This document shows positions 1 to 64,000 of a stretch of DNA of 64,000 nt, one piece after another. A model generated the notes under the pieces. That model was not told where the DNA came from. It did not search any database and saw nothing but the letters and a program-made list of their open reading frames with translations. The stretch's first letter is position 1; each line of letters starts with the position of its first letter. The position numbers were made by a program, and so were the translations under genes. Source of the DNA: Haplodiscus bocki (taxonomy: Eukaryota); assembly GCA_965655095.1 (NCBI GenBank), contig OZ296657.1:16368001-16432000 (forward strand). The letters run 5' to 3'.

Positions 1-2822
1 CTCTGAATCGCAATGAATGATCGTGGAAAGTTTCCAATCCTAACGTTAAAATTCTGAAAAAGCAATTAATGATCGTGAAAAATTTTCCATCTTGATGCGA
101 TTTTCTTGACTGGCAACGAATGATCTTTAAAAGATTTCTATTCCGAACAGAAGTTTCTCTATCGCAAGGAGTGATTGTGAAGAGATTTCTTTCTTGACCT
201 GATTTTTCTGAATCGCAAGGAAAGTTCGGGACATGGTTTCCACTTTAATGTGGTGTCTCTGATTCGCTATCAAAGATCGTGAAAACCTCTCCATCCTGAT
301 TTGATTTTTCTGAATCGCAATGTATGATCGTGAAAAGATCTCTATATTGAACAAATTTTTTTCAGTCTAAATGGACGATCGTGACAAACTTTGGATCTTG
401 AGTTGGTTTTTCCTAATGGCAATGACTGATCGTGACAAGATATGCATCTTAACGTTTCATTTCCTAATCGCAAAATTAATCGTGGAAAGATGTCTTTCCC
501 GGCGTGATATTTCTGAATTGCTAAGACTGATCGTGAGAAGACTTCCATCTTGACTCGGTTTTTCCTAATCGCAATGAAAGAAGGTGAAAACATCTCCGTC
601 TTGACGTGACGTTTCTGAATCGCAACGAAGGATGCTGAAAAGATTTGTAATTTGAACAATTTTCTCTAAATCTCAAGGGACAATCGTGACAAGATTTACA
701 TTTTGACTTGGTATTTCTTAATCGCAACGAACGATCGTGCGGAGGTTTGCTTCTTGACGTGGTTTTTCCTTACTGCCGAAAAATTATCGTGTATAGATTT
801 CCATCCTTACGTTATTTTTCTCAATCGCAATGAGTGATCGTGAAAAGCTCTCTGTCTTGACCAGAAGTGTCTCTATCGCAAGGAGTGATCGTTAAGAGAT
901 ATCAGAGATATCAGTCTCGATCTGATCTTTTTGAATCGCAAGAAAAGGTCATGACAAGAATTCCACTTTGACGTGGTGTTTCTGAATCACAGTCAAAGAT
1001 CGTGAAAAGATGTCCATCGTGATGTGATTTTTCTGACTCGCAACGAATGATCCAGACAAGATTTGCAACTTGACCTGGTATTTCCTAATCGCAATGAATG
1101 AGCATGACAAGATTTGCATTTTGACATGGTATTTAGTACCGGCAATGAATGATCGTGTAAAGATTTGCAACTTGACCTGGTTTTTCCTAATCGCTATGAA
1201 TGATCGTGACAAGATTTGCAACTTGACATGGTATATCCTTATTATAATGACTAATAGCGACAGGATTTGCGTCTTGACGTGATAATTCCTAATCGGAAAA
1301 AAATGATTGTGCAAAGATTTCCATCATGACGTGAAGTTTCTGAGCCGCAACGAATGATCCTGAAAAAGATCTCTATCTTGAACAAAAATTTCTAATTCTC
1401 AATGAACGATCGTGACAAGATTTGAACTTTGAGGTGGTATTTCTTAATGGCATTGAATGATAGTGACAATATTTGCGTGTCTTGACGTGGTACTTCTTAA
1501 TCGCATTGAACGATCGTGACAATATTTGCTTCTTGAACTGGTTTTTCTTAACAGCCGAAATATTTTTGTGGAAGGATTTCCATCCTAACGTGATTTCTCT
1601 GAATCGCAATGATTGATCGTGGAAAGTTTCCAATCCTAACGTTAAAATTCTGAAAAAGCAATTAATGATCGTGAAAAATTTTCCATCTTGATGCGATTTT
1701 CTTGACTGGCAACGAATGATCTTTAAAAGATTTCTATTCCGAACAGAAGTTTCTCTATCGCAAGGAGTGATTGTGAAGAGATTTCTTTCTTGACCTGATT
1801 TTTCTGAATCGCAAGGAAAGTTCGGGACATGGTTTCCACTTTAATGTGGTGTCTCTGATTCGCTATCAAAGATCGTGAAAACCTCTCCATCCTGATTTGA
1901 TTTTTCTGAATCGCAATGTATGATCGTGAAAAGATCTCTATATTGAACAAATTTTTTTCAGTCTAAATGGACGATCGTGCCAAAATTTGCATCTTGAGTT
2001 GGTTGTTCCCATTGGCAATGATTGATCGTGACAAGATATGCATCTTAACGTTTCATTTCCTAATCGCAAAATTAATCGTGGAAAGATGTCTTTCCCGGCG
2101 TGATATTTCTGAATTGCTAAGACTGATCGTGAGAAGACTTCCATCTTGACTCGGTTTTTCCTAATCGCAATGAAAGAAGGTGAAAACATCTCCGTCTTGA
2201 CGTGACGTTTCTGAATCGCAACGAAGGATGCTGAAAAGATTTGTAATTTGAACAATTTTCTCTAAATCTCAAGGGACAATCGTGACAAGATTTACATTTT
2301 GACTTGGTATTTCTTAATCGCAACGAACGATCGTGCGGAGGTTTGCTTCTTGACGTGGTTTTTCCTTACTGCCGAAAAATTATCGTGTATAGATTTCCAT
2401 CCTTACGTTATTTTTCTCAATCGCAATGAGTGATCGTGAAAAGCTCTCTGTCTTGACCAGAAGTGTCTCTATCGCAAGGAGTGATCGTTAAGAGATATCA
2501 GAGATATCAGTCTCGATCTGATCTTTTTGAATCGCAAGAAAAGGTCATGACAAGAATTCCACTTTGACGTGGTGTTTCTGAATCACAGTCAAAGATCGTG
2601 AAAAGATGTCCATCGTGATGTGATTTTTCTGACTCGCAACGAATGATCCAGACAAGATTTGCAACTTGACCTGGTATTTCCTAATCGCAATGAATGAGCA
2701 TGACAAGATTTGCATTTTGACATGGTATTTAGTACCGGCAATGAATGATCGTGTAAAGATTTGCAACTTGACCTGGTTTTTCCTAATCGCTATGAATGAT
2801 CGTGACAAGATTTGCAACTTGA
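1..2822 (+). repeat. HOR domain 1: 1,596-bp higher-order repeat (~31 monomers), one full copy plus a partial copy
   Basis: Position 1 (ctctgaatcgcaatg) recurs at 1597. ORF pairs 127/1723, 342/1938 and 521/2117 are offset by exactly 1,596. A 9-bp duplication (agagatatc x2) is shared at 895-912 and 2491-2508. Identity ends at ~1226/2822. Confidence 0.95.
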
Positions 2823-5800
2823 GATGGTATTTCCAGTTCGCAAAGTTTGAACATGAGAACATTTCCATCATGACGTGACTTTTTATGAATCGCAAAAAAA
2901 GATCGTTGAACAATTTCAATCATGACGTGATTTTTGGCAAATGCAACGATTAAGCCAGAAAATATTTCAGACTTCACGTTATAATTCTGAATCTCAATGA
3001 ATGATTGTGAAAAAATTTCAATCTCGACGAGGTATTTCATAATCGCAGTCAAACATTGTGGAAAAGTTTCCATCCTGACATGATTTTTCTTAATCGCAAC
3101 GAATGATCGTGACAAGATTTGCAACCTGACGTGGTATTTTCCAATCGCATTGAATGATCGTGCCAAGATTTGCAACTTGACCTGGTTTTTCCTAATCGCA
3201 ATGAATGATCGTGACAAGATTTGCAACTTGACGTAGTATTTCTCAATGGCAATGACTAATCTTGACAAGATTTGCAACTTGACGTGGTATTTCTGAATAT
3301 TAATGATTGATCCTGACAAGGAGTACCCGCAATGAACGATTGTGTAAAGATTTCCATCTTGACATGATTTTTCTGAGTCGCAATGAATGATCGTGACAAG
3401 ATTTGCAACTCAACCTGGTTTTTATTAATCGCAATGAATGGTCGTGACAAGATTTGCTTCCTGATGGGGTTTTTCTTAATCGCAAAAAATGATCGTAGAA
3501 AGAATTCCATCCTCACATGTTTTTCTGAAGTGCAACGATTGATCGTGACAAGAACATCATCACGACGTGGTATTTCCTAATTGCAAAAAATGATCGTGGA
3601 AGAAGTTCCAACATGGTGTGCACTTTTTGAGTCGCAATGAATGATCGTTAAAAGCTTCCAAGCTTCGGGTGATAATTCTGAAAAGCAAAGAATGATCGTG
3701 AGTAGACATCTTTTCTGGATCAGAAATTTCTCTATCGCAAGGAGTGTTCGTGAAGATTTTTCTATTTTGACCTGTTTTGTCTGAATCGCTGGGAATGATC
3801 CAGACAAGATTTCAATCTTTGACGTTGTTTTTCTTAAGCGCATTGATTGATCGTGAAAACATTTCCATCCCGACGTTATTTTTCGGGATCGCAATGAATG
3901 ATCATGACAAGATGTGGGACTTTGCGTGGTATTGTTTAATCGCGAAGAATGATTGTGAAAAGATTTCTATTTTGACCACAATTTTCTAAATCTCAATGAA
4001 CGTGTTTGACAAGATTTCCACCTTGACGTGGTATTTCCTTATCACAATTGGCGATGGTGAAAACTTCTTCATCTTCACGTGATTTTTTTGAATCGCAATG
4101 ACTGACCGTGAAAACATTTCCAACTTGACGTGGTGTTTCATAATTGCAATGAAAGATGGTGGAAAAATTTCCGACCTGACATGACTTTTCTGAATCGAGG
4201 GCAAGGGCCTTGAAAAAATTTTTACCTTGAGCAAACTTTTCTACATCTCAATGAAGGATCGTGACAAGATTTGCATTCTGACGTGGTATTTCCTTATCGC
4301 AAAGACTAATATTGCCAGGGTTTGCGTCTTGACGTGATATTTCCTATCTGCATAAAAAGATTGTGGAAAGATTTCCATCCTGACGTGTTTCTTGTGAATT
4401 GCAACGATTGATCGTGAAAAGATCTCTATCTTGAACGAAAAATTCTAAATCTCAATGAACGATCGTGACAAGATTTAAACTTTGAGGTGATATTTCTTAT
4501 TGGCAAAGAATGATAGTGACAATACTTGCGTCTGGACGTCGTATTTCCTAATCGCAAACACAAATTGTGGAAAAAAATTTCTTCCTGGCGTGTTTTCTCC
4601 GGATTACAATGATTGATTGTGAAAAGATTTCCATCATGACTTGTTGTTTCTAATCGTAATTAATTATCATGAAAACGTTTCCATCCTGACGTGTTTTTTT
4701 TCCGAAATGTATTGAAAGATCGTTGAAAAATTTCAATCATGACGTGATTTTTTTGGAATGCAGTGAACGATCGTGAAAAGTTTTCCATCTTGACGTGGTT
4801 TTTCCTAATCGAAATGAAAGATGGTGAAAACACCTTTGTCCTGGAGGAATTTTTCTGAGTCGCAACGAAGGATGCTGAAAAGATTTCTATCTTGAACAAA
4901 TTCTTCTTCATCTCAAGGAACAATCGTGACAAAACTTGCTTTTTGACGTGGTATTTCTTAATCGCAATGAACGATCGTGACAAGATTTGCATCCTGACGT
5001 GGTATTTTTTATCACAATGACTGACAGTGACAAGATTTGCGTCTTTACGTGGTAATTCCCAATCGCGAAAAAATTATTGTGCAAAGATTTCCATAAGGAC
5101 GTGAAGTTCCTGAAACGCAATGAAAGATCGTAAAAAGATCTCTAGATTGAACAGACTTTTCTAAATTTCAATGGACAATCGTGACAAGGTTCGCATCTTG
5201 AGGTGGTATTTCCCAATGGCAGGGAAGGATAGTGACAAGATCTGGGTCTTGAAGTGGTTTTTACTAGTCGCAAAAAATGAATGTGGAAAGATTTCCATCC
5301 TGAGGTGACTTCTATGAGTTGCAACGATTGGTCAGGAAAAGTTTTCCATCTTGACTTGGTATTGTTTAATTGGAATGATTGATAGTGAAAATGTTTCCAT
5401 CCTGACGTGCTATTTCTGGTTCAAAATGAACGATCGTGAAAAATAATTCTATGCAGACGTGACTTTTCTGAATCGCAATGAATGACCGTGAAAAAATTTC
5501 CAACTTGACGTGGTTTTTCATAATCGCAATGAAAGATGGTGGAAACATTTCCAACCTGACATGACTTTTCTGACTCGCGAGCAAGGATCTTGAAAATATT
5601 TTTATCTTGAGCAAACTTTTCTACATCTCAATGAAGGACCGTGAAAACATTTGCTTCTTGACGTGTTTTTTCTTAATTGCAATCAAAAATCGTTAAAACG
5701 TTTCCATCCTGAAGTGGCTTTTCCTGAACCCCAAGGGATGATTGTGACAAGATCTGCAACTTGACAGGGTATTTCCAGTTCGCAACGTATGAACATGAGA

Positions 5801-6455
5801 ACAATTCCATCACCACGTGACCTTTTATGAATCGCAATCAAAGATCGTTGAACGATTTCAATCATGACGTGATTTTTCGGAAATGCAACGAATAAGCATG
5901 AAAAGATCTCAGACTTCACGTTATAATTCTGAATCTCAATGAATGACCGTGAAAAGATTTCAATCTCGACGTAGTATTTCTCAATCGCAGTCAAACATTG
6001 TGGAAATGTTTCCATCCTGATATGATTTTTCTGAATCGCAACGAATGATCGTGAGAAGATTTGCAACTTGACGTGGTATTTCCTAATCGCAATGAATGAT
6101 CATGACAAGATTTGCATTTTGACATGGTTTTTAGTACCCGCAATGAATGATCGTGTAAGGATTTCCATCTTGACATGATTTTTCTGAGTCGCAATGAATA
6201 ACCGTGACAAGATTTGCAACTTGACCTGGTTTTTCCTAATCGCAATGAATGATCGTGACAAGGTTTGCAACTTGACATGGTATATCCTTATCGCAATGAC
6301 TAATAGCGACAGGATTTGCGTCTTGACGTGATATTTCCTAATCTTAAAATATGATTAAGCAAAGATTTCCATTATGACGTGAAGTTTCTGAGCCGCAATG
6401 AATGATCATGAAAAAGATATCTATCTTGAACAAAATTTTCTAAATCTAAATGAAC
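2823..6455 (+). repeat. Older, more diverged mosaic of the monomer strings later amplified in domain 2
   Basis: Contains diverged copies of strings found downstream: 5142-5324 vs 7444-7626, 3577-3894 vs 15113-15430, and 3986-4234 vs 8589-8837. There is also internal similarity between ~2820-3130 and ~5760-6070. Confidence 0.75.
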
Positions 6456-9400
6456 GATCGTGACAAGATTTGAACTTTGAGGTGGTATTTCTTAATGGCA
6501 ATGAATGATGGTTACAATATTTGCGTCTTGACGTGGTTTTTCTTAATCACAAACAAAAATCGTGGGAAAAACTTTCTTCCTGGCGTGTTTTCTCTGGATT
6601 ACAATGATTGATTGTGAGAAGATATCCATCTTGACTTGTTATTTCTAATCGTAATGAAGGATCATGAAAACGTTTCCATCCTGACGTGTTTTTTTCCGAA
6701 ATGTATTGAAAGATCGTTAGAAGAGTTCGATCATTACGTGAATTTTCTGCAATGCAGTGAATGATCGTGAAAAGATTCCAGTCTTCACGTTATAAAATCT
6801 GAATCGCAATGAAAGATCGTGAAAAGATTTGCATTTTGACGTGGTATTTCTTAATCGCAAACAAAAAACGTGGAAGAAACTTTCTTTCTGGCGTGTTTTC
6901 TCTGAATTACAATGATTGATTGCGAAAAAATTTCCATCTTGACTTGATATTTCTTAATCGCAATGAATGATCGTGAAAATGTTTCCACCCTGACGTGACT
7001 TTTCCGAATTGGCTTGAAAGATCGTTGAAAGATTTCAATCATGACGTGAATTTTTTGGAATGCAGTGAATGATCGTGAAAGATTTTCCATCGTGAGGTGG
7101 TTTTTTTTAATCGCAATGAAAGATGGTGAAAACATCTTCGTCTTGAAGTAATTTTTTTGAGTCGCAACGAAGGATGCTGAAAAGATTTCTATCTTGAACA
7201 AATTTTTCTTCACCTCAAGGAACAATCGTGACAAAATTTGCTTTTTGACGTGGTATTTCTTAATCGCAATTAACGATCGTGACAAGATTTGCATCCTGAC
7301 GTGGTATTTTTTATCACAATGACTGACAGTGACAAGATTTGCGTCTTTACGTGGTAATTCCCAATCGCGAAAAAATGATTGTACAAAGATTTCCATAAGG
7401 ACGTGAAGTTCCTGAAACGCAATGAAAGATCGTAAAAAGATCTCTAGATTGAACAGACTTTTCTAAATTTCAATGGACAATCGTGACAAGGTTCGCATCT
7501 TGAGGTGGTATTTCCCAATGGCAGGGAAGGATAGTGACAAGATCTGGGTCTTGAAGGGGTTTTTACTAGTCGCAATAAATGAATGTGGAAAGATTTCCAT
7601 CCTGAGGTGACTTCTATGAAATGCAACGATTGATCAGGAAAAGTTTTCCATCTTGACTTGGTATTTCTTAATCGGAATGAATGATAGTAAAAATGTTTCC
7701 ATCCTGACGTGCTATTTCTGGTTCAAAATGAATGATCGTGAAAAACAAATCCATGCAGACGTAACTTTTCTGAATCGCAATGAATGATCATTGAAAGGTT
7801 TCCATATTGAGGTGATGTTATTTAAAGTTATTGAATGATCGCGAAAAAACTTTGCGACTTGACCTGGTATTTCCTAATCGCAATGAATGAGCATGACAAG
7901 ATTTGCATTTTGACATGGTATTTAGTACCGGCAATGAATGATCGTGTAAAGATTTCCATCTTGACATGATTTTTCTGAGTCGCAATGAATGATCGTGACA
8001 AGATTTGCAACTCAACCTGGTTTTTATTATTCGCAATGAATGGTCGTGACAAGATTTGCTTCCTGATGGGGTTTTTCTTAATCGCAAAAAATGATCGTAG
8101 AAAGAATTCCATCCTCACATGTTTTTCTGAAGTGCAATGATTGATCGTGACAAGAACTTCATCACGACGTGGTATTTCCTAATTGCAAAAAATGATCGTG
8201 GAAGAAGTTCCAACATGGTGTGCACTTTTTGAGTCGCAATGAATGATCGCTAAAAGCTTCCAAGCTTCGGGTGATAATTCAGAAAATGCAAAGAATGATC
8301 GTGAGTAGACATCTTTTCTGGATCAGAAATTTCTCTATCGCAAAGAGTGTTCATGAAGATTTTTCTATCTTGACCTGTTTTGTCTGAATCTCTGGGAATG
8401 ATCCAGACAAGATTTCAATCTTTGACGTTGTTTTTCTTAAGCGCATTGATTGATCGTGAAAACATTTCCATCCCGACGTTATTTTTCGGGATCGCAATGA
8501 ATGATAATGACAAGATGTGGGACTTGGCGTGGTATTGTTTAATCGCGAAGAATGATTGTGAAAAGATTTCTATTTTGACCACAATTTGCTAAATCTCAAT
8601 GAACGTTTTTGACAAGATTTCCACCTTGACGTGGTATTTCCTTATCACAATTAGCGATGGTGAAAACTTTTTCATCTTCACGTGATTTTTTTGAATCGCA
8701 ATGACTGACCGTGAAAACATTTCCAACTTGACGTGGTTTTCCATAATTGCAATGAAAGATGGTGGAAAAATTTCCGACCTGACGTGACTTTTCTGAATCG
8801 AGGGCAACGGCCTTGAAAAAATTTCTACCTTGAGCAAATTTTTCTACATCTCAATGAAGGATCGTGACAAGATTTGAACTTTGAGGTGGTATTTCTTAAT
8901 GGCAATGAATGATGGTTACAATATTTGCGTCTTGACGGGGTTTTTCTGAGTCGCAATGAATAACCGTGACAAGATTTGCAACTTGACCTGGTTTTTCCTA
9001 ATCGCAATGAATGATCGTGACAAGGTTTGCAACTTGACATGGTATATCCTTATCGCAATGACTAATAGCGACAGGATTTGCGTCTTGACGTGATATTTCC
9101 TAATCTTAAAATATGATTAAGCAAAGATTTCCATTATGACGTGAAGTTTCTGAGCCGCAATGAATGATCATGAAAAAGATATCTATCTTGAACAAAATTT
9201 TCTAAATCTAAATGAACGATCGTGACAAGATTTGAACTTTGACGTGGTTTTTCTTAATCGCAAACAAAAATCGTGGGAAAAACTTTCTTCCTGGCGTGTT
9301 TTCTCTGGATTACAATGATTGATTGTGAGAAGATATCCATCTTGACTTGTTATTTCTAATCGTAATGAAGGATCATGAAAACGTTTCCATCCTGACGTGT

Positions 9401-12400
9401 TTTTTTCCGAAATGTATTGAAAGATCGTTAGAAGAGTTCGGTCATTACGTGAATTTTCTGCAATGCAGTGAATGATCGTGAAAAGATTCCAGTCTTCACG
9501 TTATAAAATCTGAATCGCAATGAAAGATCGTGAAAAGATTTGCATTTTGACGTGGTATTTCTTAATCGCAAACAAAAAACGTGGAAGAAACTTTCTTTCT
9601 GGCGTGTTTTCTCTGAATTACAATGATTGATTGCGAAAAAATTTCCATCTTGACTTGATATTTCTTAATCGCAATGAATGATCGTGAAAATGTTTCCACC
9701 CTGACGTGATTTTTCCGAATTGGCTTGAAAGATCGTTGAAAGATTTCAATCATGACGTGAATTTTTTGGAATGCAGTGAATGATCGTGAAAGATTTTCCA
9801 TCGTGAGGTGGTTTTTTTTAATCGCAATGAAAGATGCTGAAAACATCTTCGTCTTGAAGTAATTTTTCTGAGTCACAACGAAGGATGCTGAAAAGATTTC
9901 TATCTTGAACAAGTTTTTCTTCATCTCAAGGAACAATCGTGACAAAATTTGCTTTTTGACGTGGTACTTCTTAATCGCAATTAACGATCGTGACAAGAAT
10001 TGCATCCTGACGTGGTATTTTTTATCACAATGACTGACAGTGACAAGATTTGCGTCTTTACGTGGTAATTCCCAATCGCGGAAAAATGATTGTACAAAGA
10101 TTTCCATAAGGACGTGAAGTTCCTGAAACGCAATGAAAGATCGTAAAAAGATCTCTAGATTGAACAGACTTTTCTAAATTTCAATGGACAATCGTGACAA
10201 GGTTCGCATCTTGATGTGGTATTTCCCAATGGCAGGGAAGGATATTGACAAGATCTGGGTCTTGAAGGGGTTTTTACTAGTCGCAATAAATGAATGTGGA
10301 AAGATTTCCATCCTGAGGTGACTTCTATGAAATGCAACGATTGATCAGGAAAAGTTTTCCATCTTGACTTGGTATTTCTTAATCGGAATGAATGATAGTA
10401 AAAATGTTTCCATCCTGACGTGCTATTTCTGGTTCAAAATGAATGATCGTGAAAAACAAATCCATGCAGACGTAACTTTTCTGAATCGCAATGAATGATC
10501 ATTGAAGGATTTCCATATTGAGGTGATGTTAATTAAAGTTATTGAATGATCGCGAAAAAACTTTGCGACTTGACCTGGTATTTCCTAATCGCAATGAATG
10601 AGCATGACAAGATTTGCATTTTGACATGGTATTTAGTACCGGCAATGAATGATCGTGTAACGATTTCCATCTTGACATGATTTTTCTGAGTCGCAATGAA
10701 TGATCGTGACAAGATTTGCAACTCAACCTGGTTTTTATTATTCGCAATGAATGGTCGTGACAAGATTTGCTTCCTGATGGGGTTTTTCTTAATCGCAAAA
10801 AATGATCGTAGAAAGAATTCCATCCTCACATGTTTTTCTGAAGTGCAATGATTGATCGTGACAAGAACTTCATCACGACGTGGTATTTCCTAATTGCAAA
10901 AAATGATCGTGGAAGAAGTTCCAACATGGTGTGCACTTTTTGAGTCGCAATGAATGATCGCTAAAAGCTTCCAAGCTTCGGGTGATAATTCAGAAAATGC
11001 AAAGAATGATCGTGAGTAGACATCTTTTCTGGATCAGAAATTTCTCTATCGCAAAGAGTGTTCATGAAGATTTTTCTATCTTGACCTGTTTTGTCTGAAT
11101 CTCTGGGAATGATCCAGACAAGATTTCAATCTTTGACGTTGTTTTTCTTAAGCGCATTGATTGATCGTGAAAACATTTCCATCCCGACGTTATTTTTCGG
11201 GATCGCAATGAATGATAATGACAAGATGTGGGACTTGGCGTGGTATTGTTTAATCGCGAAGAATGATTGTGAAAAGATTTCTATTTTGACCACAATTTGC
11301 TAAATCTCAATGAACGTTTTTGACAAGATTTCCACCTTGACGTGGTATTTCCTTATCACAATTAGCGATGGTGAAAACTTTTTCATCTTCACGTGATTTT
11401 TTTGAATCGCAATGACTGACCGTGAAAACATTTCCAACTTGACGTGGTTTTCCATAATTGCAATGAAAGATGGTGGAAAAATTTCCGACCTGACATGACT
11501 TTTCTGAATCGAGGGCAAGGGCCTTGAAAAAATTTCTACCTTGAGCAAATTTTTCTACATCTCAATGAAGGATCGTGACATGATTTGAACTTTGAGGTGG
11601 TATTTCTTAATGACAATGAATGATGGTTACAATATTTGCGTCTTGACGTGGTTTTTCTTAATCGCAAACAAAAATCGTGGGAAAAACTTTCTTCCTGGCG
11701 TGTTTTCTCTGGATTACAATGATTGATTGTGAGAAGATATCCATCTTGACTTGTTATTTCTAATCGTAATGAAGGATCATGAAAACGTTTCCATCCTGAC
11801 GTGTTTTTTTCCGAAATGTATTGAAAGATCGTTAGAAGAGTTCGATCATTACGTGAATTTTCTGCAATGCAGTGAATGATCGTGAAAAGATTCCAGTCTT
11901 CACGTTATAAATCTGAATCGCAATGAAAGATCGTGAAACGATTTGCATTTTGACGTGCTATTTCTTAATCGCAAACAAAAAACGTGGAAGAAACTTTCTT
12001 TCTGGCGTGTTTTCTCTGAATTACAATGATTGATTGCGAAAAAATTTCCATCTTGACTTGATATTTCTTAATTGCAATGAATGATCGTGAAAATGTTTCC
12101 AACCTGACGTGATTTTTCCGAATTGGCTTGAAAGATCGTTGAAAGATTTCAATCATGACGTGAATTTTTTGGAATGCAGTGAATGATCGTGAAAGATTTT
12201 CCATCGTGAGGTGGTTTTTTTTAATCGCAATGAAAGATGGTGAAAACATCTTCGTCTTGAAGTAATTTTTCTGAGTCGCAACGAAGGATGCTGAAAAGAT
12301 TTCTATCTTGAACAAATTTTTCTTCATCTCAAGGAACAATCGTGACAAAATTTGCTTTTTGACGTGGTATTTCTTAATCGCAATTAAGGATCGTGACAAG

Positions 12401-13980: not shown

Positions 13981-14169
13981 ACAAGATTTGCATTCTGACG
14001 TGGTATTTCTTTATCGCAAAGACTAATATTGCCAGGGTTTGCGTCTTGACGTGATATTTCCTATCTGCATAAAAAGATTGTGGAAAGATTTCCATCCTGA
14101 CGTGTTTCTTCTGAATTGCAACGGTTGATCGTGAAAAGATCTCTATCTTGAACGAAATTTTCTAAACCT

Positions 14170-53305: not shown

Positions 53306-53309
53306 ACTT

Positions 53310-55285
53310 GGTTTTTCATTATCCCAAAAAAAAGTCGTGTAAAAAGATCCATCACGACGTGAAGTTTCTGGTTCGCAATGAACGATCGTGAAAAAAGTCC
53401 AAGCTTCACGTGATGTTTCTGAATTGCATTGAATGATCAAGAAAATTTTTGGTTGATGACGTGGTATTTCTTAACCGCAAGGAAAACTCGTGAGGTTTTT
53501 TCCACTGTGATGTGATTGTTTTGATTCGCAAAAAATAATCGTGAAAACAATTCTATCTTCACGTGAGTTTTTTGAACCGCAGTGAACGACGGTGAAAACA
53601 TTTCCACGTTGACGTGGTTTTTTTTAATCGGAAAGGAAGATCATGGAGACACTTCCATCTTGACGTGATTTTTTTGAATCGGAAAAAATGATCGTGGAAA
53701 CACTCCTCTATCTTGAGGTGAAATTTCTGAATCCCAGTGAATGACCGGGAAAGTGTTTCCATGTTGACGTGGTATTTCTTAATCAGAAAGGAAGATCTTG
53801 AAAACTTTTCCGCCCTAACGTGATTTTTCTGAATCGCTATGAACGATTGGGAAGAAATTTCAATCTTGACGTGCATTTCCTTGTTCACCAAAATTAATTG
53901 TGAGAAATAATTCCATGCTGACGTGATCTTTTGGAACCGCAATGAATGATCGCGAAAGGGTTTCCATTTTGACGTGGCACTTCGTAACCGGGTAGAATGG
54001 CGGTTGAAACATTTTCAACTTGACGTGATTTTTATGAATCGCAATGAACCATCGGGAAAAGATTTCCTTCTTGAAGTCGTGTTTCTTACTCTCATTGATT
54101 GATTTGGAAAACATTTGCATCCTGACGTGAACATTCTGAATCGCAATCAATGATTGTGAAAGAATTCCTACCTTGACCTGATTTTTCCGAATCACAAGAA
54201 ATGATCGTCACAAGGTATCCAACTTGACAAGGTATTTCTTCATCGCAAGCATTGATAGTGAAAAGGTTTCCGCCTTAACGTTATCTTTCCGATTTGCAAT
54301 GGCTGATGGTTACAAGATTATCAACTTGAAGTGGTATTTCGTAATAGCAATGACTAATCGTGACAAGGTTTGCATCTCGAATTTGTTTTTCATTATCCCA
54401 AAAAAAAGTCGTGTAAAAAGATCCATCACGACGTGAAGTTTCTGGTTCGCAATGAACGATCGTGAAAAAAGTCCAAGCTTCACGTGATGTTTCTGAATTG
54501 CATTGAATGATCAAGAAAATTTTTGGTTGATGACGTGGTATTTCTTAACCGCAAGGAAAACTCGTGAGGTTTTTTCCACTGTGATGTGATTGTTTTGATT
54601 CGCAAAAAATAATCGTGAAAACAATTCTATCTTCACGTGAGTTTTTTGAACCGCAGTGAACGACGGTGAAAACATTTCCACGTTGACGTGGTTTTTTTTA
54701 ATCGGAAAGGAAGATCATGGAGACACTTCCATCTTGACGTGATTTTTTTGAATCGGAAAAAATGATCGTGGAAACACTCCTCTATCTTGAGGTGAAATTT
54801 CTGAATCCCAGTGAATGACCGGGAAAGTGTTTCCATGTTGACGTGGTATTTCTTAATCAGAAAGGAAGATCTTGAAAACTTTTCCGCCCTAACGTGATTT
54901 TTCTGAATCGCTATGAACGATTGGGAAGAAATTTCAATCTTGACGTGCATTTCCTTGTTCACCAAAATTAATTGTGAGAAATAATTCCATGCTGACGTGA
55001 TCTTTTGGAACCGCAATGAATGATCGCGAAAGGGTTTCCATTTTGACGTGGCACTTCGTAACCGGGTAGAATGGCGGTTGAAACATTTTCAACTTGACGT
55101 GATTTTTATGAATCGCAATGAACCATCGGGAAAAGATTTCCTTCTTGAAGTCGTGTTTCTTACTCTCATTGATTGATTTGGAAAACATTTGCATCCTGAC
55201 GTGAACATTCTGAATCGCAATCAATGATTGTGAAAGAATTCCTACCTTGACCTGATTTTTCCGAATCACAAGAAATGATCGTCAC
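53310..55285 (+). repeat. Near-identical 1,074-bp single-unit duplication
   Basis: ORFs 53559/54633 and 53860/54934 have identical translations. Private variants (gatcaagaaaattttt, gaatcccagtgaatgaccggg) are shared by these two units only. Confidence 0.85.
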
Positions 55286-58200
55286 AAGATATCCATCTTG
55301 ACAAGGTATATCCTTATCGCAAGCAACGATAGTGAAAACGTTTCCGTCCTGACTTTTTTTCTGATTTGCAAAGGTTGATGGTGACAGGATTATCAATTTG
55401 AAGTGGTATTCGTAATAGCAATGACTAATCGTGACAAGGTTTGCATCTCGACTTGGTTTTTCATAATCCCAAAAAACGGTCGTGTAAAAAGATCCATCAC
55501 CACGTGAAGTTTCTGGTTCGCAATGAACGATCGTGAAAAAAGTCCAAGCTTCACGTGATATTTCTGAATTGCATTGAATGATCATGAAAAGTTTTGGTTG
55601 ATGACGTGGTATTTCTTAACCGCAAGGAAAACTCGTGAGGTTTCTTCCACTGTGATTTGATTGCTTTGATTCGCAAAAAATGATCGTGAAAACAATTCTA
55701 TCTTCACGTTAGTTTTTTGAACCGCAGTGAACGACGGTGAAAACATTTCCACGTTGACGTGATTTTTTTTAATCGTAAAAGAAGATCGTGGAGACACTTC
55801 AATCTTGACGTGATTTTTTTGAATCGGAAAAAATGATCGTGAAAACACTCCTCCATCTTGAGGTGAAATTTCTGAATCACAGTGAATGACGGGGAAAATC
55901 TTTCCATATTGACGTGGTGTTTCTTAATCGGAAAGTAATATCTTGAAAAGCTTTCCGGCCTGACGTCAATTTTCTGATACGCTATGAACGATTGTGAAAA
56001 AATTTCAATCTTGATGTGCAATTCCTTGTTCACGATGATTGATCGTGAAAAACATTTCCATGCTGACGTGATTTTTCTGATTCGCAATGAATGATCGCGA
56101 AAAGGTTTCCATTTTGACGTGGTACTTCGTAACCGGATAGAATGCCGGTGAAAACTTTTTCAACTTGACGTGATTTTTCTGAATCGCAATGAACCATCGG
56201 GAAAAGATTTCCTTCTTGAAGTCGTGTTTCTTAATCTCCTTGACTGATTGTGAAAACATTTGCGTCCTGACGTGAATATTCTGAATCGCAATGAATGATT
56301 GTGAAAGAATTCCTACCTCGACCTGATTTTTCTGATTCACAAGAAATCATCGTCACAAGGTATCCATCTTGACAAGGTATTTCTCTATCGCAAGCAACGA
56401 TAGTTGAAACGTTTCCATCGTGACGTTTTTTTCCTGATTTGCAATGATTGATGGTGACAGGGTTGACAACTTGAAGTGGTGTTTCTTAACAGCAATGACT
56501 GGTCGTGACAAGATTTGCATCTCGACTTGGTTTTTCATAATCCCAAAAAATGGTCGTGCAAAAAGATCCATCGTGACGTGATTTTTCTGATTCGCAATGA
56601 ATGATCGTGAAAAATTTCTAAGCTTCACGGGATATTCCTGAATTGCATTGAATGATCGTGAAAAATTTTGGTTGATGACGTGGTATTTCCTAACCGCAAG
56701 GAAAGATCGTGAGGTTTTTTCCACTCTGATGTGATTGTTTTGATTCGAAAAAATGATCGTGAAAACAATTCTATCTTGATGTGAATTTTCTGAATCGCAG
56801 TGAACGACGGTGAAAACATTTCCACGTTGACGTGGTTTTTTTTAATCGTAAAAGAAGATCGTGGAAACAATTCCATCTTGACGTGATTTTTTTGAATCGG
56901 AAAAAATGATCGTGAAAACACTCCTCCATCTTGGGGTGAAATTTTTGAATCACAGTGAATGACGGGGAAAATGTTTCCATGTTGACGTGGTATTTCTTAA
57001 TCAGAAAGGAAGATCTTGAAAACTTTTCCGCCCTAACGTGATTTTTCTGAATCGCTATGAACGATTGGGAAGAAATTTCAATCTTGACGTGCATTTCCTT
57101 GTTCACCAAAATTAATTGTGAGAAACAATTCCATGCTGACGTGATCTTTTGGAACCGCAATGAATGATCGCGAAAGGGTTTCCATTTTGACGTGGAACTT
57201 CGTAACCGGGTAGAATGGCGGTTGAAACATTTTCAACTTGACGTGATTTTTATGAATCGCAATGAACCATCGGGAAAAGATTTCCTTCTTGAAGTCGTGT
57301 TTCTTACTCTCATTGATTGATTTGGAAAACATTTGCATCCTGACGTGAACATTCTGAATCGCAACCAATGATTGTGAAAGAATTCCTACCTTGAGCTGAT
57401 TTTTCCGAATCACAAGAAATGATCGTCACAAGATATCCATCTTGACAAGGTATATCCTTATCGCAAGCAACGATAGTGAAAACGTTTCCGTCCTGACTTT
57501 TTTTCTGATTTGCAAAGGTTGATGGTGACAGGATTATCAATTTGAAGTGGTATTCGTAATAGCAATGACTAATCGTGACAAGGTTTGCATCTCGACTTGG
57601 TTTTTCATAATCCCAAAAAACGGTCGTGTAAAAAGATCCATCACGACGTGAAGTCTCTGGTTCGCAATGAACGATCGTGAAAAAAGTCCAAGCTTCACGT
57701 CATATTTCTGAATTGCATTGAATGATCATGAAAAGTTTTGGTTGATGACGTGGTATTTCTTAACCGCAAGGAAAACTCGTGAGGTTTTTTCCACTGTGAT
57801 TTGATTGTTTTGATTCGCAAAAAATGATCGTGAAAACAATTCTATCTTCACGTGAGTTTTTTGAACCGCAGTGAACGACGGTGAAAACATTTCCACGTTG
57901 ACGTGATTTTTTTTAATCGTAAAAGAAGATCGTGGAGACACTTCCATCTTGACGTGATTTTTTTGAATCGGAAAAAATGATCGTGAAAACACTCCTCCAT
58001 CTTGAGGTGAAATTTCTGAATCACAGTGAATGACGGGGAAAATCTTTCCATGTTGACGTGGTGTTTCTTAATCGGAAAGGAATATCTTGAAAAGCTTTCC
58101 GGCCTGACGTCATTTTTCTGAATCGCTATGAACGATTGTGAAAAAATTTCAATCTTGATGTGCAATTCCTTGTTCACAATGATTGATCGTGAAAAACATT

Positions 58201-61200
58201 TCCATGCTGACGTGATTTTTCTGATTCGCAATGAATGATCGCGAAAAGGTTTCCATTTTGACGTGGTACTTCGTAACCGGACAGAATGCCGGTGAAAACT
58301 TTTTCAACTTGACGTGATTTTTATGAATCGCAATGAACCATCGGGAAAAGATTTCCTTCTTGAAGTCGTGTTTTTTAATCCCCTTGATTGATTGTGAAAA
58401 CATTTGCGTCCTGACGTGATTATTCTGAATCACAATGAATGATTGTGAAGGAATTCCTACCTCGACCTGATTTTTCTGATTCACAAGAAATCATCGTCAC
58501 AAGGTATCCATCTTGACAAGGTATTTCTCTATCGCAAGCAACGATAGTTGAAACGTTTCCATCGTGACGTTATTTTCCTGATTTACAATGATTGATGGTG
58601 ACAGGATTGACAACTTGAAGTGGTATTTCTTAACAGCAATGACTGGTCGTGACAAGATTTGCATCTCGACTTGGTTTTTCATAATCCCAAAAAATGGTCG
58701 TGCAAAAAGATCCATCGTGACGTGATTTTTCTGATTCGCAATGAATGGTCGTGAAAAATTTCTAAGCTTCACGGGATATTCCTGAATTGCATTGAATGAT
58801 CGTGAAAAATTTTGGTTGATGACGTGGTATTTCCTAACCGCAAGGAAAGATCGTGAGGTTTTTTCCACTCTGATGTGATTGTTTTGATTCGCAAAAAATG
58901 ATCGTGAAAACAATTCTCCCTTGATGTGAATTTTCTGAATCGCAGTGAACGACGGTGAAAACATTTCCACGTTGACGTGGTTTTTTTTAATCGGAAAGGA
59001 AGATCGTGGAAACAATTCCATCTTGACGTTATTTTTTTGAATCGGTAAAAATGATCGTGAAAACACTCCTCCATCTTGAGGTGAAATTTTTGAATCACAG
59101 TGAATGACGGGGAAAATGTTTCCATGTTGACGTGGTATTTCTTAATCAGAAAGGAAGATCTTGAAAACTTTTCCGCCCTAACGTGATTTTTCTGAATCGC
59201 TATGAACGATTGGGAAGAAATTTCAATCTTGACGTGCATTTCCTTGTTCACAAAAATTAATTGTGAGAAACAATTCCATGCTGACGTGATCTTTTGGAAC
59301 TGCAATGAATGATCGCGAAAGGGTTTCCATTTTGACGTGGCACTTCGTAACCGGGTAGAATGGCGGTTGAAACATTTTCAACTTGACGTGATTTTTATGA
59401 ATCGCAATGAACCATCGGGAAAAGATTTCCTTCTTGAAGTCGTGTTTCTTAATCCCCTTGATTGATTGTGAAAACATATGCATCCTGAAGTGAACATTCT
59501 GAATCGCATTCAATGATTGTGAAAGAATTCCTGCCTTGACCTGATTTTTCCGAATCACAAGAAATGATCGTCACAAGATATCCATCTTGACAAGGTATAT
59601 CCTTATCGCAAGCAACGATAGTGAAAACGTTTCCGTCCTGACTTTTTTTCTGATTTGCAAAGGTTGATGGTGACAGGATTATCAATTTGAAGTGGTATTC
59701 GTAATAGCAATGACTAATCGTGACAAGGTTTGCATCTCGACTTGGTTTTTCATAATCCCAAAAAACGGTCGTGTAAAAAGATCCATCACCACGTGAAGTT
59801 TCTGGTTCGCAATGAACGATCGTGAAAAAAGTCCAAGCTTCACGTGATATTTCTGAATTGCATTGAATGATCATGAAAAGTTTTGGTTGATGACGTGGTA
59901 TTTCTTAACCGCCAGGAAAACTCGTGAGGTTTTTTCCACTGTGATGTGATTGTTTTGATTCGCAAAAAATGATCGTGAAAACAATTCTATCTTCACGTGA
60001 GTTTTTTGAACCGCAGTGAACGACGGTGAAAACATTTCCACGTTGACGTGATATTTTTTATTCGTAAAAGAAGATCGTGGAGACACTTCCATCTTGACGT
60101 GATTTTTTTGAATCGGAAAAAATGATCGTGAAAACACTCCTCCATCTTGAGGTGAAATTTCTGAATCACAGTGAATGACGGGGAAAATCTTTCCATATTG
60201 ACGTGGTGTTTCTTAATCGGAAAGTAATATCTTGAAAAGCTTTCCGGCCTGACGTCATTTATCTGAATCGCTATGAACGATTGTGAAAAAATTTCAATCT
60301 TGATGTGCAATTCCTTGTTCACAATGATTGATCGTGAAAAACATTTCCATGCTGACGTGATTTTTCTGATTCGCAATGAATGATCGCGAAAAGGTTTCCA
60401 TTTTGACGTGGCACTTGGTAACCGGATAGAATGCCGGTGAAAACTTTTTCAACTTGACGTGATTTTTCTGAATCGCAATGAACCATCGGGAAAAGATTTC
60501 CTTCTTGAAGTCGTGTTTCTTAATCTCCTTGATTGATTGTGAAAACATTTGCGTCCTGACGTGAATATTCTGAATCGCAATGAATGATTGTGAAAAATTT
60601 CTAAGCTTCACGGGATATTCCTGAATTGCATTGAATGATCGTGAAAAATTTTGGTTGATGACGTGGTATTTCCTAACCGCAAGGAAAGATCGTGAGGTTT
60701 TTTCCACTCTGATGTGATTGTTTTGATTCGCAAAAAATGATCGTGAAAACAATTCTCCCTTGATGTGAATTTTCTGAATCGCAGTGAACGACGGTGAAAA
60801 CATTTCCACGTTGACGTGGTTTTTTTTAATCGGAAAGGAAGATCGTGGAAACAATTCCATCTTGACGTTATTTTTTTGAATCGGTAAAAATGATCGTGAA
60901 AACACTCCTCCATCTTGAGGTGAAATTTTTGAATCACAGTGAATGACGGGGAAAATGTTTCCATGTTGACGTGGTATTTCTTAATCAGAAAGGAAGATCT
61001 TGAAAACTTTTCCGCCCTAACGTGATTTTTCTGAATCGCTATGAACGATTGGGAAGAAATTTCAATCTTGACGTGCATTTCCTTGTTCACAAAAATTAAT
61101 TGTGAGAAACAATTCCATGCTGACGTGATCTTTTGGAACTGCAATGAATGATCGCGAAAGGGTTTCCATTTTGACGTGGCACTTCGTAACCGGGTAGAAT

Positions 61201-63600
61201 GGCGGTTGAAACATTTTCAACTTGACGTGATTTTTATGAATCGCAATGAACCATCGGGAAAAGATTTCCTTCTTGAAGTCGTGTTTCTTAATCCCCTTGA
61301 TTGATTGTGAAAACATATGCATCCTGAAGTGAACATTCTGAATCGCATTCAATGATTGTGAAAGAATTCCTGCCTTGACCTGATTTTTCCGAATCACAAG
61401 AAATGATCGTCACAAGATATCCATCTTGACAAGGTATATCCTTATCGCAAGCAACGATAGTGAAAACGTTTCCGTCCTGACTTTTTTTCTGATTTGCAAA
61501 GGTTGATGGTGACAGGATTATCAATTTGAAGTGGTATTCGTAATAGCAATGACTAATCGTGACAAGGTTTGCATCTCGACTTGGTTTTTCATAATCCCAA
61601 AAAACGGTCGTGTAAAAAGCTCCATCACCACGTGAAGTTTCTGGTTCGCAATGAACGATCGTGAAAAAAGTCCAAGCTTCACGTGATATTTCTGAATTGC
61701 ATTGAATGATCATGAAAAGTTTTGGTTGATGACGTGGTATTTCTTAACCGCCAGGAAAACTCGTGAGGTTTTTTCCACTGTGATGTGATTGTTTTGATTC
61801 GCAAAAAATGATCGTGAAAACAATTCTATCTTCACGTGAGTTTTTTGAACCGCAGTGAACGACGGTGAAAACATTTCCACGTTGACGTGATATTTTTTAT
61901 TCGTAAAAGAAGATCGTGGAGACACTTCCATCTTGACGTGATTTTTTTGAATCGGAAAAAATGATCGTGAAAACACTCCTCCATCTTGAGGTGAAATTTC
62001 TGAATCACAGTGAATGACGGGGAAAATCTTTCCATATTGACGTGGTGTTTCTTAATCGGAAAGTAATATCTTGAAAAGCTTTCCGGCCTGACGTCATTTA
62101 TCTGAATCGCTATGAACGATTGTGAAAAAATTTCAATCTTGATGTGCAATTCCTTGTTCACAATGATTGATCGTGAAAAACATTTCCATGCTGACGTGAT
62201 TTTTCTGATTCGCAATGAATGATCGCGAAAAGGTTTCCATTTTGACGTGGCACTTGGTAACCGGATAGAATGCCGGTGAAAACTTTTTCAACTTGACGTG
62301 ATTTTTCTGAATCGCAATGAACCATCGGGAAAAGATTTCCTTCTTGAAGTCGTGTTTCTTAATCTCCTTGATTGATTGTGAAAACATTTGCGTCCTGACG
62401 TGAATATTCTGAATCGCAATGAATGATTGTGAAAGAATTCCTACCTCGACCTGATTTTTCTGATTCACAAGAAATCATCGTCACAAGGTATCCATCTTGA
62501 CAAGGTATTTCTCTATCGCAAGCAACGATAGTTAAAACCTTTCCATCTTGACGTTATTTTTCTGATTTGCAATGATTGATGGTGACAGGATTGACAACTT
62601 GAAGTGGTATTTCTTAACAGCAATGACTGTTCGTGACAAGATTTGTATCTCGACTTGCTTTTTCATAATCCCAAAAAATGGTCGTGCAAAAAGATCCATC
62701 GTGACGTGATTTTTCTGATTAGCAATGAATGATCGTGAAAAATTTCTAAGCTTCACGGGATATTCCTGAATTGCATTGAATGATCATGAAAAATTTTGGT
62801 TGATGACGTGGTATTTCCTAACCGCAAGGAAAGATCGTGAGGTTTTTTTCACTCTGATGTGATTGTTTTGATTCGCAAAAAATGATCGTGAAAACAATTC
62901 TATCTTGATGTGATTTTTCTGAATCGCAGTGAACGACGGTGAAAACATTTCCACGTTGACGTGGTTTTTTTTAATCGGAAAGGAAGATCGTGGAAACAAT
63001 TCCATCTTGACGTGATTTTTTTGAATCGGAAAAAATGATCGTGAAAACACTCTTCCATCTTGAGGTGAAATTTTTGAATCACAGTGAATGACGGGGAAAA
63101 AGTTTCCGTGTTGACGTGTTGACGTGGTTTTTCTGAATCAGAAACGAAGATCTGTAGAACCTTTCCGCCCTGACGTCATTTTTCTGAATCGCTATGAATG
63201 ATTGTGAAAAAAATTCAATCTTGACGTGCAATTCCTTGTTCACAATAATTGATCGTGAAAAACAATTCCATGTTGACGTGATTTTTCCGAACCGCAATGA
63301 ATGATCGCGAGAGGGTTTCCATTTCAACGTGGTACTTCGTAACCGGACAGAATGGCGGCGAAATTATTCTGAACTTGACGTGTATTTTCTGAATCGCAAT
63401 GAACCATCGGGAAAAGATATCCTTCTTAAAGTCGTGTTTCTTAATCTCATTGATTGATTGTGAAAACATTTGCATCCTGACGTGAATATTCTGAATCGCA
63501 AGGAATGATTGTGAAAGAATTCCTACCTTGACCTGATTTTTCTGAATCACAAGAAATGATCGTCGTAAGGTATCGATCTTGACAAGGTATTCTTTATCGC
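55285..63600 (+). repeat. Alternating two-variant (~2,145-bp) super-HOR of the 21-mer, including an out-of-register 1,839-bp duplication (58751-60589 / 60590-62434)
   Basis: ORFs 55582/57726/59871 are offset by 2,144 and 2,145, and 56353/58497 by 2,144. Pairs 58769/60608, 59223/61062, 59871/61710 and 59993/61832 are all offset by 1,839 with identical translations. Confidence 0.9.
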
Positions 63601-64000
63601 AAGCAACGATTGTTAAAACGTTTCCATCGTGACTTTATTCTCCTGATTTGCAATGATTGATGGTGACAGGATTGACAACTTGAAGTGGTATTTCTTAAAA
63701 ACAATGACTGATCGTGACAAGATTTGCATCTCGACTTGGTTTTTCATAATCCCAAAAAAAGGTCGTGCAAAAAGATCCATCATGACGTGATTTTTCTGAT
63801 TTGCATTGAATGATGGTGAAATATTTTGGTTGATGATGTGGTATTTCCTAACCGCAAGGAAAGATCGTGAGGTTTTTTCCACTCTGATGTGATTGTTTTG
63901 ATTCGCAAAAAATGATCAAGAAAACAACTCTATCTTGATGTGAATTTTCTGAATCGCAGTGAACGACGGTGAAAACATTTCCACGTTGACGTGGTTTTTT

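What the first reader, a model, noticed from the sequence alone, without database searches (positions are those of the whole stretch)
1..64000. Layered, alpha-satellite-like higher-order repeat system built on a 51-bp monomer (candidate centromeric satellite)
Seen: adjacent monomers differ at many positions, yet blocks of about 21, 31, 43, 47 and 122 monomers repeat almost perfectly. Distinct HOR families occupy successive domains separated by diverged zones. Established: this monomer-to-HOR-to-super-HOR layering is the hallmark of primate alpha-satellite centromeres, whose monomer is 171 bp. Inference: this is a centromeric or pericentromeric array with at least four HOR layers within 64 kb. 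I do not recognise the monomer as a named satellite family, so it may be undescribed. If the contig is actually prokaryotic, viral or extrachromosomal, a gene-free 64-kb HOR array would be even more remarkable.
Basis: partly seen in the sequence, partly recalled or inferred. Interest (0 to 1): 0.85.

Follow-up and report, generated by a model that had tools for sequence, protein, structure and literature searches.

The report
51-bp satellite with nested higher-order repeats
The whole window is non-coding satellite DNA built from about 1,250 head-to-tail copies of a 51-bp unit, re-copied in larger blocks much as in human centromere DNA; this is a well-known kind of repeat, and nothing here shows that it acts as a centromere.

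Summary
All 64,000 bases form one uninterrupted, one-directional array of 1,253 monomers. Spacing is exactly 51 bp in 992 of 1,252 cases. Neighbouring monomers are only 57-62% alike, yet multi-monomer blocks recur at 90-100% identity.

There are three superdomains:
- A (1-27.5 kb): nested duplications of two or three copies, spaced 31, 47/53 and 122 monomers apart.
- B (28.8-37.8 kb): a 43-monomer unit in about four copies.
- C (39.5-64 kb): a 21-monomer (1,071-1,074 bp) repeat in about 22 copies, with 42- and 63-monomer super-units and a young core at 46-54 kb.

Only B and C are higher-order repeat (HOR) arrays in the strict sense.

The array is non-coding. Long ORFs lie only on the minus strand because the consensus happens to lack stop codons there, and column shuffles give equally long ORFs.

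The same family, including the 42-monomer unit at 96.4% identity, fills at least 34 kb of a 324-kb contig and at least 22 kb of a near-identical 126-kb contig in a separate public assembly.

I found no CENP-B box, dyad symmetry, 10-bp phasing or telomere repeats. Centromere function could not be tested. Earlier scan notes report other HOR satellites, from different monomer families, elsewhere in this genome (an animal, probably a coral), but not this 51-bp family. It is a new member of a known kind.

The parts
1..64000 (+). Uninterrupted head-to-tail array of 1,253 monomers of a 51-bp satellite. Consensus: GCAATGAATGATCGTGAAAAGATTTCCATCTTGACGTGATTTTTCTGAATC. The array runs off both ends of the window.
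   Evidence: TRF; nhmmer decomposition, all hits on +; spacing distribution; column frequencies
1..27500 (+). Superdomain A: a mosaic of nested low-copy block duplications that share pieces at 70-97% identity.
   Evidence: Block identity matrix; self-BLAST
1..3141 (+). 31-monomer (1,596 bp) block, two tandem copies, 92.9% identical.
   Evidence: lag-31 identity 0.715
6141..14828 (+). Block of about 2.4-2.7 kb in three tandem copies spaced 2,711 bp (53 monomers) and 2,404 bp (47 monomers) apart, 90.6-91.4% identical. First-to-third copy (lag 100) identity is 0.868.
13952..27182 (+). 122-monomer (6,214 bp) block, two tandem copies, 96.6% identical. Each copy holds three inner blocks spaced 1,359 and 1,815 bp apart, marked by a 29-bp truncated monomer (3300, 16195, 18010, 22409, 24224; variants at 14849 and 21063).
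27200..28800 (+). Diverged zone between A and B: monomers with no repeated 25-mers.
28819..37818 (+). Superdomain B: 43-monomer HOR (2,182-2,187 bp), about four copies. Identity is 92% overall and at least 97% between middle copies. Each unit consists of two halves of about 21.5 monomers (lag 21-22 identity 0.68-0.69). These halves are colinear with the 21-monomer unit of C at 0.655-0.671, against a background of 0.597 +/- 0.021.
29469..29510 (+). 21-bp extra piece with forward-inverted-forward 8-mers (GTTGTGAA / TTCACAAC / GTTGTGAA). It occurs once per 43-monomer unit (also at 31663, 33845, 36032).
36700..39500 (+). Diverged zone between B and C. It contains one old copy of the 21-monomer unit (37347-38399, 78.5% to the reference).
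39503..64000 (+). Superdomain C: 21-monomer HOR (1,071-1,074 bp; 21 x 51 = 1,071), about 22 in-register copies. Identity to the reference unit 48333-49405 is 83-99.6%. The young core lies at 46.2-54.8 kb, with older copies on both sides.
47261..53696 (+). 63-monomer (3,219 bp) super-unit. Units 47261 and 50480, and units 48333 and 51552, are each about 100% identical.
54772..63044 (+). 42-monomer (2,144-2,145 bp) super-HOR. Two types of 21-monomer unit alternate: 97-100% identical within a type, about 90% between types. One 1,839-bp irregular step occurs at 59-61 kb.

Best explanation
This is a non-coding satellite DNA family with a 51-bp monomer. It forms an array of more than 64 kb, free of transposable elements and running in one direction, in an animal genome (probably a coral, according to earlier scan notes).

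Shown: the monomers diverged long ago from one consensus. The three superdomain consensuses differ at only 1-3 of 51 positions, and pairwise identity is close to that expected from independent decay of one consensus. Blocks of monomers were later re-amplified in register with the 51-bp frame, giving nested repeats. A weak 3-monomer (153 bp) echo is seen in C only. An old unit of about 21 monomers is shared by B and C. On top of that sit the present 21-, 42/43- and 63-monomer HORs, and the 31- to 122-monomer duplications in A.

Inferred mechanism: repeated unequal crossing-over or sister-chromatid exchange, and tandem segmental duplication between out-of-register but monomer-phased copies. Exchange is mostly local, which produces a young homogeneous core (46-54 kb) with older copies on both sides.

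Inferred role: a block of repetitive, probably heterochromatic DNA with no sequence-specific function visible in the sequence. Whether kinetochores form on it is open. I put that at about one in four.
For: - Array anatomy.
- HOR periods and identities. Shuffle control for lag 21: 0.809 against 0.597 +/- 0.0045.
- One family: superdomain consensuses differ at 1-3 positions.
- Deeper layers: identity at lags that are multiples of 3 is 0.598 against 0.579 in C only. B units are colinear with the C unit every ~1,090 bp.
- Non-coding: 217 of 1,252 spacings are 50, 52 or 53 bp, which shift the reading frame. The longest open stretch is 331 codons, against 308 +/- 44 in column shuffles. Substitutions among HOR copies show no codon-phase bias (124/105/103). 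There are no protein homologues among 5.8 billion clusters and no Pfam hit above cut-off. There is no Rfam family and no tRNA.
- Real DNA: unitigs at 99-100% identity in four runs from two samples.
- Present elsewhere: the same family fills record positions 53,097-87,138 of ENA contig ctg88239 and 103,531-125,598 of ctg84910. This includes a 6.8-kb match at 96.4% to window 53915-60744 with the same 2,145-bp period.
Against: - Nothing in the sequence tells where on the chromosome the array lies or what chromatin it carries, so 'heterochromatic, no specific function' is a default rather than a result.
- The taxon comes only from earlier unverified scan notes.
- Long-range HOR order rests on one assembly. 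The public runs are short-read unitigs that cannot span a 1-kb unit.
- Minus-strand stop trinucleotides are about 6% fewer than in column shuffles (1,415 against 1,508 +/- 19). I attribute this small deficit to non-independence of HOR copies but did not fully explain it.
Confidence: 0.85

Rival explanations
1. The array is the kinetochore-forming (centromeric) or immediately pericentromeric satellite of one or more chromosomes. The young homogeneous 21-monomer core at 46-54 kb would be the active part and the older domains would be displaced flanking layers, as in the layered-expansion picture of primate alpha satellite.
For: - A long array with no transposon insert in 64 kb.
- A multi-copy HOR with a young core and older copies on both sides.
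- Several successive HOR domains of one family.
- The family forms large arrays on other contigs, where a transposon insert sits at a domain boundary.
- A weak 153-bp (3-monomer) periodicity close to nucleosome length.
- Published cytogenetics places highly repeated DNA at centromeres in Acropora (PMC12355185).
Against: - HORs and identity gradients arise in any satellite that evolves by local unequal exchange.
- No CENP-B-box core above chance, no dyad symmetry beyond shuffles, no 10.2-bp WW phasing.
- The chromosomal position is unknown.
- Earlier notes list several other HOR satellites in the same genome (about 155-177-bp monomers) as equally good candidates.
- In other corals the highly repeated DNA maps to telomeric regions (PMC12355185), and putative Acropora centromeres were associated with LINE peaks rather than a satellite (PMC11577847).
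Confidence: 0.25
2. The array encodes, on the minus strand, a protein with 17-residue repeats (51 = 3 x 17), or it is the remains of such a gene.
For: All 106 ORFs of at least 90 aa lie on the minus strand, up to 305 aa. The monomer length is a multiple of three and is tightly kept. Minus-strand stops are about 6% fewer than in column shuffles.
Against: - The consensus has no stop in any of the three minus-strand frames, and ORFs occur in all three frames.
- The longest open stretch falls within the shuffle expectation.
- 17% of spacings are 50, 52 or 53 bp and shift the frame.
- Conservation shows no 3-base periodicity (1.12/0.97/0.96 bits), and recent substitutions show none either.
- No homologues beyond one 56-aa ORF called on the same satellite elsewhere, and no Pfam domain.
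Confidence: 0.01
3. The long-range HOR order is an assembly artefact: mis-joined or collapsed satellite reads.
For: Only one assembly of this exact stretch was available. Public runs give unitigs of only 70-156 bp, about 40% of sampled 31-mers are found in them, and some bins are uncovered.
Against: - Copies differ by 3-10%, enough for accurate long reads to tell them apart.
- The structure is internally coherent: landmarks recur in phase.
- A separate public assembly shows the same 2,145-bp unit at 96.4% over 6.8 kb.
- HOR-variant-specific unitigs occur at 99-100% identity in two samples.
Confidence: 0.03
4. The satellite is an amplified internal tandem repeat of a mobile element. This genome is rich in Helitron-like chains, and in some invertebrates satellites derive from such elements. 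On this reading the array spreads by transposition rather than only by unequal exchange.
For: Earlier notes describe abundant Helitron-like arrays in this genome. Related arrays exist on other contigs.
Against: No element termini, coding remnants or non-satellite sequence occur anywhere in the 64 kb. The only foreign DNA in the related contigs is a 1.6-kb insert carrying a high-copy ORF that interrupts the array rather than framing it.
Confidence: 0.05

Closest known systems
Primate alpha satellite (171-bp monomer, chromosome-specific HORs)
   Same: Diverged monomers (about 60% identity here; alpha figures are from established knowledge), multi-monomer units repeated at 90-100%, super-HORs, successive domains, and a young core with older flanks.
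   Different: The monomer is 51 bp, not 171 bp. There is no CENP-B-box core. The host is a different phylum, and centromere location and CENP-A binding are not shown here.
Short-monomer satellites with higher-order structure, such as the 41-42-bp repeats of bird microchromosomes (recalled from memory, not tested here)
   Same: A monomer far shorter than a nucleosome, organised into longer periodic units.
   Different: No sequence comparison was possible with these tools, and there is no shared ancestry to expect.
Other HOR satellites noted in this same genome (about 155-177-bp monomers in units of 8-17 monomers; earlier scan notes s1-381257, s1-381258, s1-359302, s1-354061)
   Same: Same genome, same monomer-to-HOR architecture, same lack of centromere evidence.
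   Different: A different monomer family and length. This one has longer HORs (21-122 monomers) and more nested tiers. I did not test those notes.
Related arrays in ENA assembly ERZ26859043 (ctg88239, ctg84910)
   Same: The same 51-bp family, all in one direction. The same 42-monomer unit matches window 53.9-60.7 kb at 96.4%.
   Different: They are not the same stretch, as no long match exceeds 96.6% identity. They include a further HOR domain (periods 1,221 and 3,220 bp) that is only 72-79% like anything in the window, and a 1.6-kb transposon-like insert.

Membership tests
Satellite DNA with higher-order repeats | Long head-to-tail array of monomers of uniform length | tested here: met
   1,253 monomers, all on the + strand; 79% of spacings are exactly 51 bp
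Satellite DNA with higher-order repeats | Neighbouring monomers much more diverged than monomers one HOR period apart | tested here: met
   Lag 1 identity 0.57-0.62 against lag 21 identity 0.81 (shuffles 0.597 +/- 0.0045), lag 43 identity 0.895, lag 122 identity 0.958
Satellite DNA with higher-order repeats | The multi-monomer unit is itself tandemly iterated many times | tested here: met
   Met for the 21-monomer unit (about 22 copies) and the 43-monomer unit (about 4 copies). The 31- and 122-monomer blocks have only two copies and the 47/53-monomer block three
Satellite DNA with higher-order repeats | Non-coding | tested here: met
Primate alpha satellite | Monomer of about 171 bp | tested here: not met
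   51 bp
Primate alpha satellite | CENP-B box in a subset of monomers | tested here: not met
   Core TTCGNNNNANNCGGG: no exact match; 12 matches with one mismatch against 9.3 expected
Functional centromeric satellite | Occupied by the centromeric histone (CENP-A/CENH3) | not testable with these tools
   No chromatin data available
Functional centromeric satellite | Located at the primary constriction, typically one main array per chromosome | not testable with these tools
   The window's position on its chromosome is not given. The family is seen on two further contigs of another assembly, which look allelic (99.3% over 13 kb). Array edges were not reached
Functional centromeric satellite | Non-B-DNA potential (dyad symmetry) in satellites that lack a CENP-B box. 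This is a proposed feature, not a strict one. | tested here: not met
   DNA folding z-scores from -1.0 to +1.6 against shuffles
Subtelomeric satellite | Adjacent to or interspersed with telomere repeats (TTAGGG)n | tested here: inconclusive
   No TTAGGG at all in the window and no TTAGGG dimer in 34 kb of the related contig, but no array edge was seen
Protein-coding tandem-repeat gene | One reading frame maintained across repeats, with codon-position bias | tested here: not met

The most novel reading that the evidence does not exclude
The 51-bp family is the centromere-forming satellite of one or more chromosomes of a coral. That would make it the first molecularly defined cnidarian centromere repeat. 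It would be a short-monomer satellite whose 3-monomer (153 bp) and 21-monomer layers, rather than a nucleosome-length monomer, carry the periodicity, with a layered young-core/old-flank history like that of primate alpha satellite.
Probability: 0.2. Interest if true: 0.6.

Novelty: new member of a known kind. Interest (0 to 1): 0.3.

Why it matters
Higher-order satellite repeats are well known from primates, rodents, plants, insects and fish, so the architecture is not new. The value here is descriptive. Satellite DNA and centromeres of cnidarians are almost uncharacterised in the literature I could search. This window gives a clean example without transposon inserts and with many tiers: 51 bp, a weak 153-bp echo, then about 21, 42/43, 63 and up to 122 monomers. 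It could serve as a FISH or CUT&Tag probe and as a model for how unequal exchange builds nested repeats on a very short monomer. If it proved centromeric, it would open cnidarian centromere biology to direct study.

It also carries a practical warning. The monomer has no stop codon on one strand and is full of TGA on the other. Automated gene callers therefore produce many false genes on it. In the public assembly the caller even switched to a TGA-reassigned genetic code.

Tried and rejected
- **Coding reading.** Rejected: see rival 2.
- **Known RNA families or tRNA-derived satellite.** None found.
- **Hairpin or dyad symmetry of the monomer, the dimer and three real 150-nt pieces.** Not better than shuffles.
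- **10.2-bp WW or AA/TT phasing.** Absent: the k=5 harmonic holds 5% of the power, permutation p = 0.33.
- **Internal 25/26-bp half-repeat in the monomer.** Not better than a shuffled consensus.
- **CENP-B-box core.** At chance level.
- **Telomere repeats.** None.
- **CpG hypermutability among HOR copies.** Absent: 0.35 against 0.30 variant states per site, so there is no sign of methylation-driven decay.
- **Dimer or trimer substructure.** No dimer layer anywhere; a weak trimer signal in superdomain C only.
- **Metagenome scan with a two-monomer in-phase pattern.** It gave 22 loci, all chance matches; none matches the monomer HMM. One of them (L016) is an unrelated tandem repeat of about 51-52 bp.
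- **Walking along ENA contig ctg88239 to reach an array edge.** This stopped at record position 53,097. Every gene called further left contains in-frame TGA, because the caller used a reassigned code, and the look-up tool does not accept proteins read through stops. I did not try to get round that.
- **Identifying the organism from the 137-aa ORF in the insert.** More than 5,000 unnamed relatives, all from ENA assemblies, and no taxon name.
- **Literature searches for a 51-bp satellite in corals or cnidarians.** Nothing found.

Full report
**What is there**

The window holds only A, C, G and T and is 37% G+C throughout. Tandem Repeats Finder reports one 51-bp period over essentially the whole window. 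I built a profile HMM from the consensus and searched both strands. It finds 1,253 monomers, all on the + strand. Successive monomer starts are exactly 51 bp apart in 992 of 1,252 cases and 50, 52 or 53 bp apart in 217. No spacing exceeds 107 bp, so there is no foreign insert anywhere in the 64 kb.

The consensus is GCAATGAATGATCGTGAAAAGATTTCCATCTTGACGTGATTTTTCTGAATC. Monomers average 78% identity to it. Conservation is spread fairly evenly at 0.2-1.6 bits per column, with no outstanding box.

**Higher-order structure**

Neighbouring monomers are 57-62% identical, and identity stays flat with distance until specific lags are reached. Further peaks lie at 27, 36, 42, 53 and 63 monomers. A block-by-block identity matrix shows three superdomains that resemble each other only at background level.

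*Superdomain A (1-27.5 kb)* is a mosaic of low-copy duplications:
- a 1,596-bp block in two copies (92.9%);
- a block of about 2.5 kb in three copies, spaced 2,711 and 2,404 bp apart (about 91%);
- a 6,214-bp block in two copies (96.6%), which itself contains three inner blocks marked by a recurrent 29-bp truncated monomer.

*Superdomain B (28.8-37.8 kb)* is a 43-monomer unit in about four copies.

*Superdomain C (39.5-64 kb)* is a 21-monomer unit of 1,071-1,074 bp (21 x 51 = 1,071) in about 22 in-register copies. Lag-21 identity is 0.809, against 0.597 +/- 0.0045 when monomer order is shuffled.

Within C, aligned units are 87-100% identical. They show a 63-monomer super-unit (pairs of units about 100% identical, 3,219 bp apart). 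From 54.8 kb onward they show a 42-monomer super-unit made of two alternating unit types. Identity to a central reference unit falls from 96-100% at 46-54 kb to 86-92% on the left and 83-94% on the right.

**Deeper layers**

The consensus sequences of A, B and C differ at only 1-3 positions, so this is one family.
- In C alone, lags that are multiples of three are slightly but consistently more alike (0.598 against 0.579). This is a faint 153-bp layer, and 21 = 7 x 3.
- B's 43-monomer unit consists of two halves of about 21.5 monomers (0.68-0.69). Both halves are colinear with C's 21-monomer unit: peaks of 0.655-0.671 recur every ~1,090 bp, against a background of 0.597 +/- 0.021. B and C therefore descend from one old HOR of about 21 monomers.

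All block periods equal whole numbers of monomers, give or take accumulated small indels. That fits exchange between monomer-phased, out-of-register copies.

**Not a gene**

All 106 ORFs of at least 90 aa lie on the minus strand, the longest being 305 aa. The cause is compositional. The consensus has six TGA triplets on the plus strand and no stop in any minus-strand frame. The window has 5,061 stop trinucleotides on the plus strand and 1,788 on the minus strand, and ORFs occur in all three minus frames.

When each alignment column is shuffled among monomers, the longest open stretch is 308 +/- 44 codons; the observed value is 331. Other lines of evidence agree:
- Frame-shifting monomer lengths are common.
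- Neither column conservation nor recent substitutions among HOR copies show a three-base pattern.
- The 305-aa ORF has no relative among 5.8 billion protein clusters and no Pfam family above cut-off.
- Rfam and the tRNA search are blank.

**Is it real, and where else is it?**

Four public runs (two samples, one study, one coded organism) hold 34-45% of the sampled 31-mers of 46.2-52.2 kb. Their short unitigs match at 99-100%. This shows the DNA exists. It cannot confirm long-range order, and I do not read the depth figures as copy number.

An exhaustive protein search returned a single hit: a 56-aa ORF. It lies on two contigs of ENA assembly ERZ26859043, of 324 kb and 126 kb. The 34 kb I could read from the first contig and the 22 kb from the second are filled with the same monomer, all in one orientation. 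The two contigs are 99.3% identical over 13 kb, so they are probably allelic.

One 6.8-kb stretch matches window 53,915-60,744 at 96.4% and has the same 2,145-bp period. The rest is a further HOR domain (periods 1,221 and 3,220 bp) only 72-79% like anything in the window. Between the two domains sits a 1.6-kb non-satellite insert. It carries a 137-aa ORF belonging to a family with more than 5,000 unnamed variants, which suggests a high-copy mobile element.

So the family occupies more than the window and has more domains than the window shows. I could not reach an array edge. The genes called further along contain in-frame TGA, and the look-up tool does not accept them.

**Centromere question**

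None of the sequence features sometimes linked to centromeres is present:
- no CENP-B-box core above chance;
- no dyad symmetry beyond shuffles;
- no 10.2-bp phasing.

There are also no telomere repeats. CpG sites are not hypermutable.

Earlier scan notes describe the genome as an animal, probably a coral, and list several other HOR satellites with 155-177-bp monomers. I did not verify the taxon, and this family is therefore one candidate among several.

In the literature I could search, coral centromeres are inferred only from recombination and repeat density. That work found an association with LINE peaks in Acropora (PMC11577847). Cytogenetics places highly repeated DNA at centromeres in Acropora but at telomeric regions in several other corals (PMC12355185). 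I found no description of a 51-bp coral or cnidarian satellite.

HOR layering and a young core with older flanks are what local unequal exchange produces in any long array. They do not distinguish a centromere from other heterochromatin.

**Verdict**

The architectural interpretation is right, apart from some overstatement about the number of true HOR layers. The centromere inference is untested; I rate it at about 0.2-0.25. The array is best described as a new, apparently undescribed satellite family of a well-known kind.

Noticed in passing
window 29469-29510; also 31663, 33845, 36032: A 21-bp extra piece made of a forward, an inverted and a forward copy of GTTGTGAA occurs once per 43-monomer unit. 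It looks like a small template-switch scar that became fixed in the HOR. This is the subject of sibling note s1-376661.
   Followed up: partly
window 3300, 16195, 18010, 22409, 24224 (variants at 14849 and 21063): A 29-bp truncated monomer (TTAATGATTGATCCTGACAAGGAGTACCC) recurs as a landmark of the 27/36-monomer inner blocks of superdomain A.
   Followed up: partly
L023 7038-8628 (ENA ctg88239, record about 74.0-75.6 kb); the same insert is in L024: A 1.6-kb non-satellite insert sits at the boundary of two HOR domains. It carries a 137-aa ORF with more than 5,000 unnamed relatives in ENA assemblies and no Pfam family, so it is probably a very abundant mobile element of the host.
   Followed up: partly
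L023, L025, L028 (gene calls on the ENA contigs): The public gene calls on this satellite contain many in-frame TGA codons, up to 18 per 'gene'. The caller evidently chose a TGA-reassigned genetic code for these contigs. All these calls are false genes caused by the satellite's composition.
   Followed up: yes
L016 420-720 (metagenome contig Ga0182742_1000124): An unrelated tandem repeat of about 51-52 bp shares GATCGTGAAAAGA and AATGAAT with this monomer. It is not significant against the monomer HMM, so the resemblance is most likely chance.
   Followed up: partly
window 39503-64000: CpG sites in the 21-monomer HOR copies vary no more than other sites (0.35 against 0.30 variant states per site). 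This suggests little methylation-driven CpG decay in this array.
   Followed up: no
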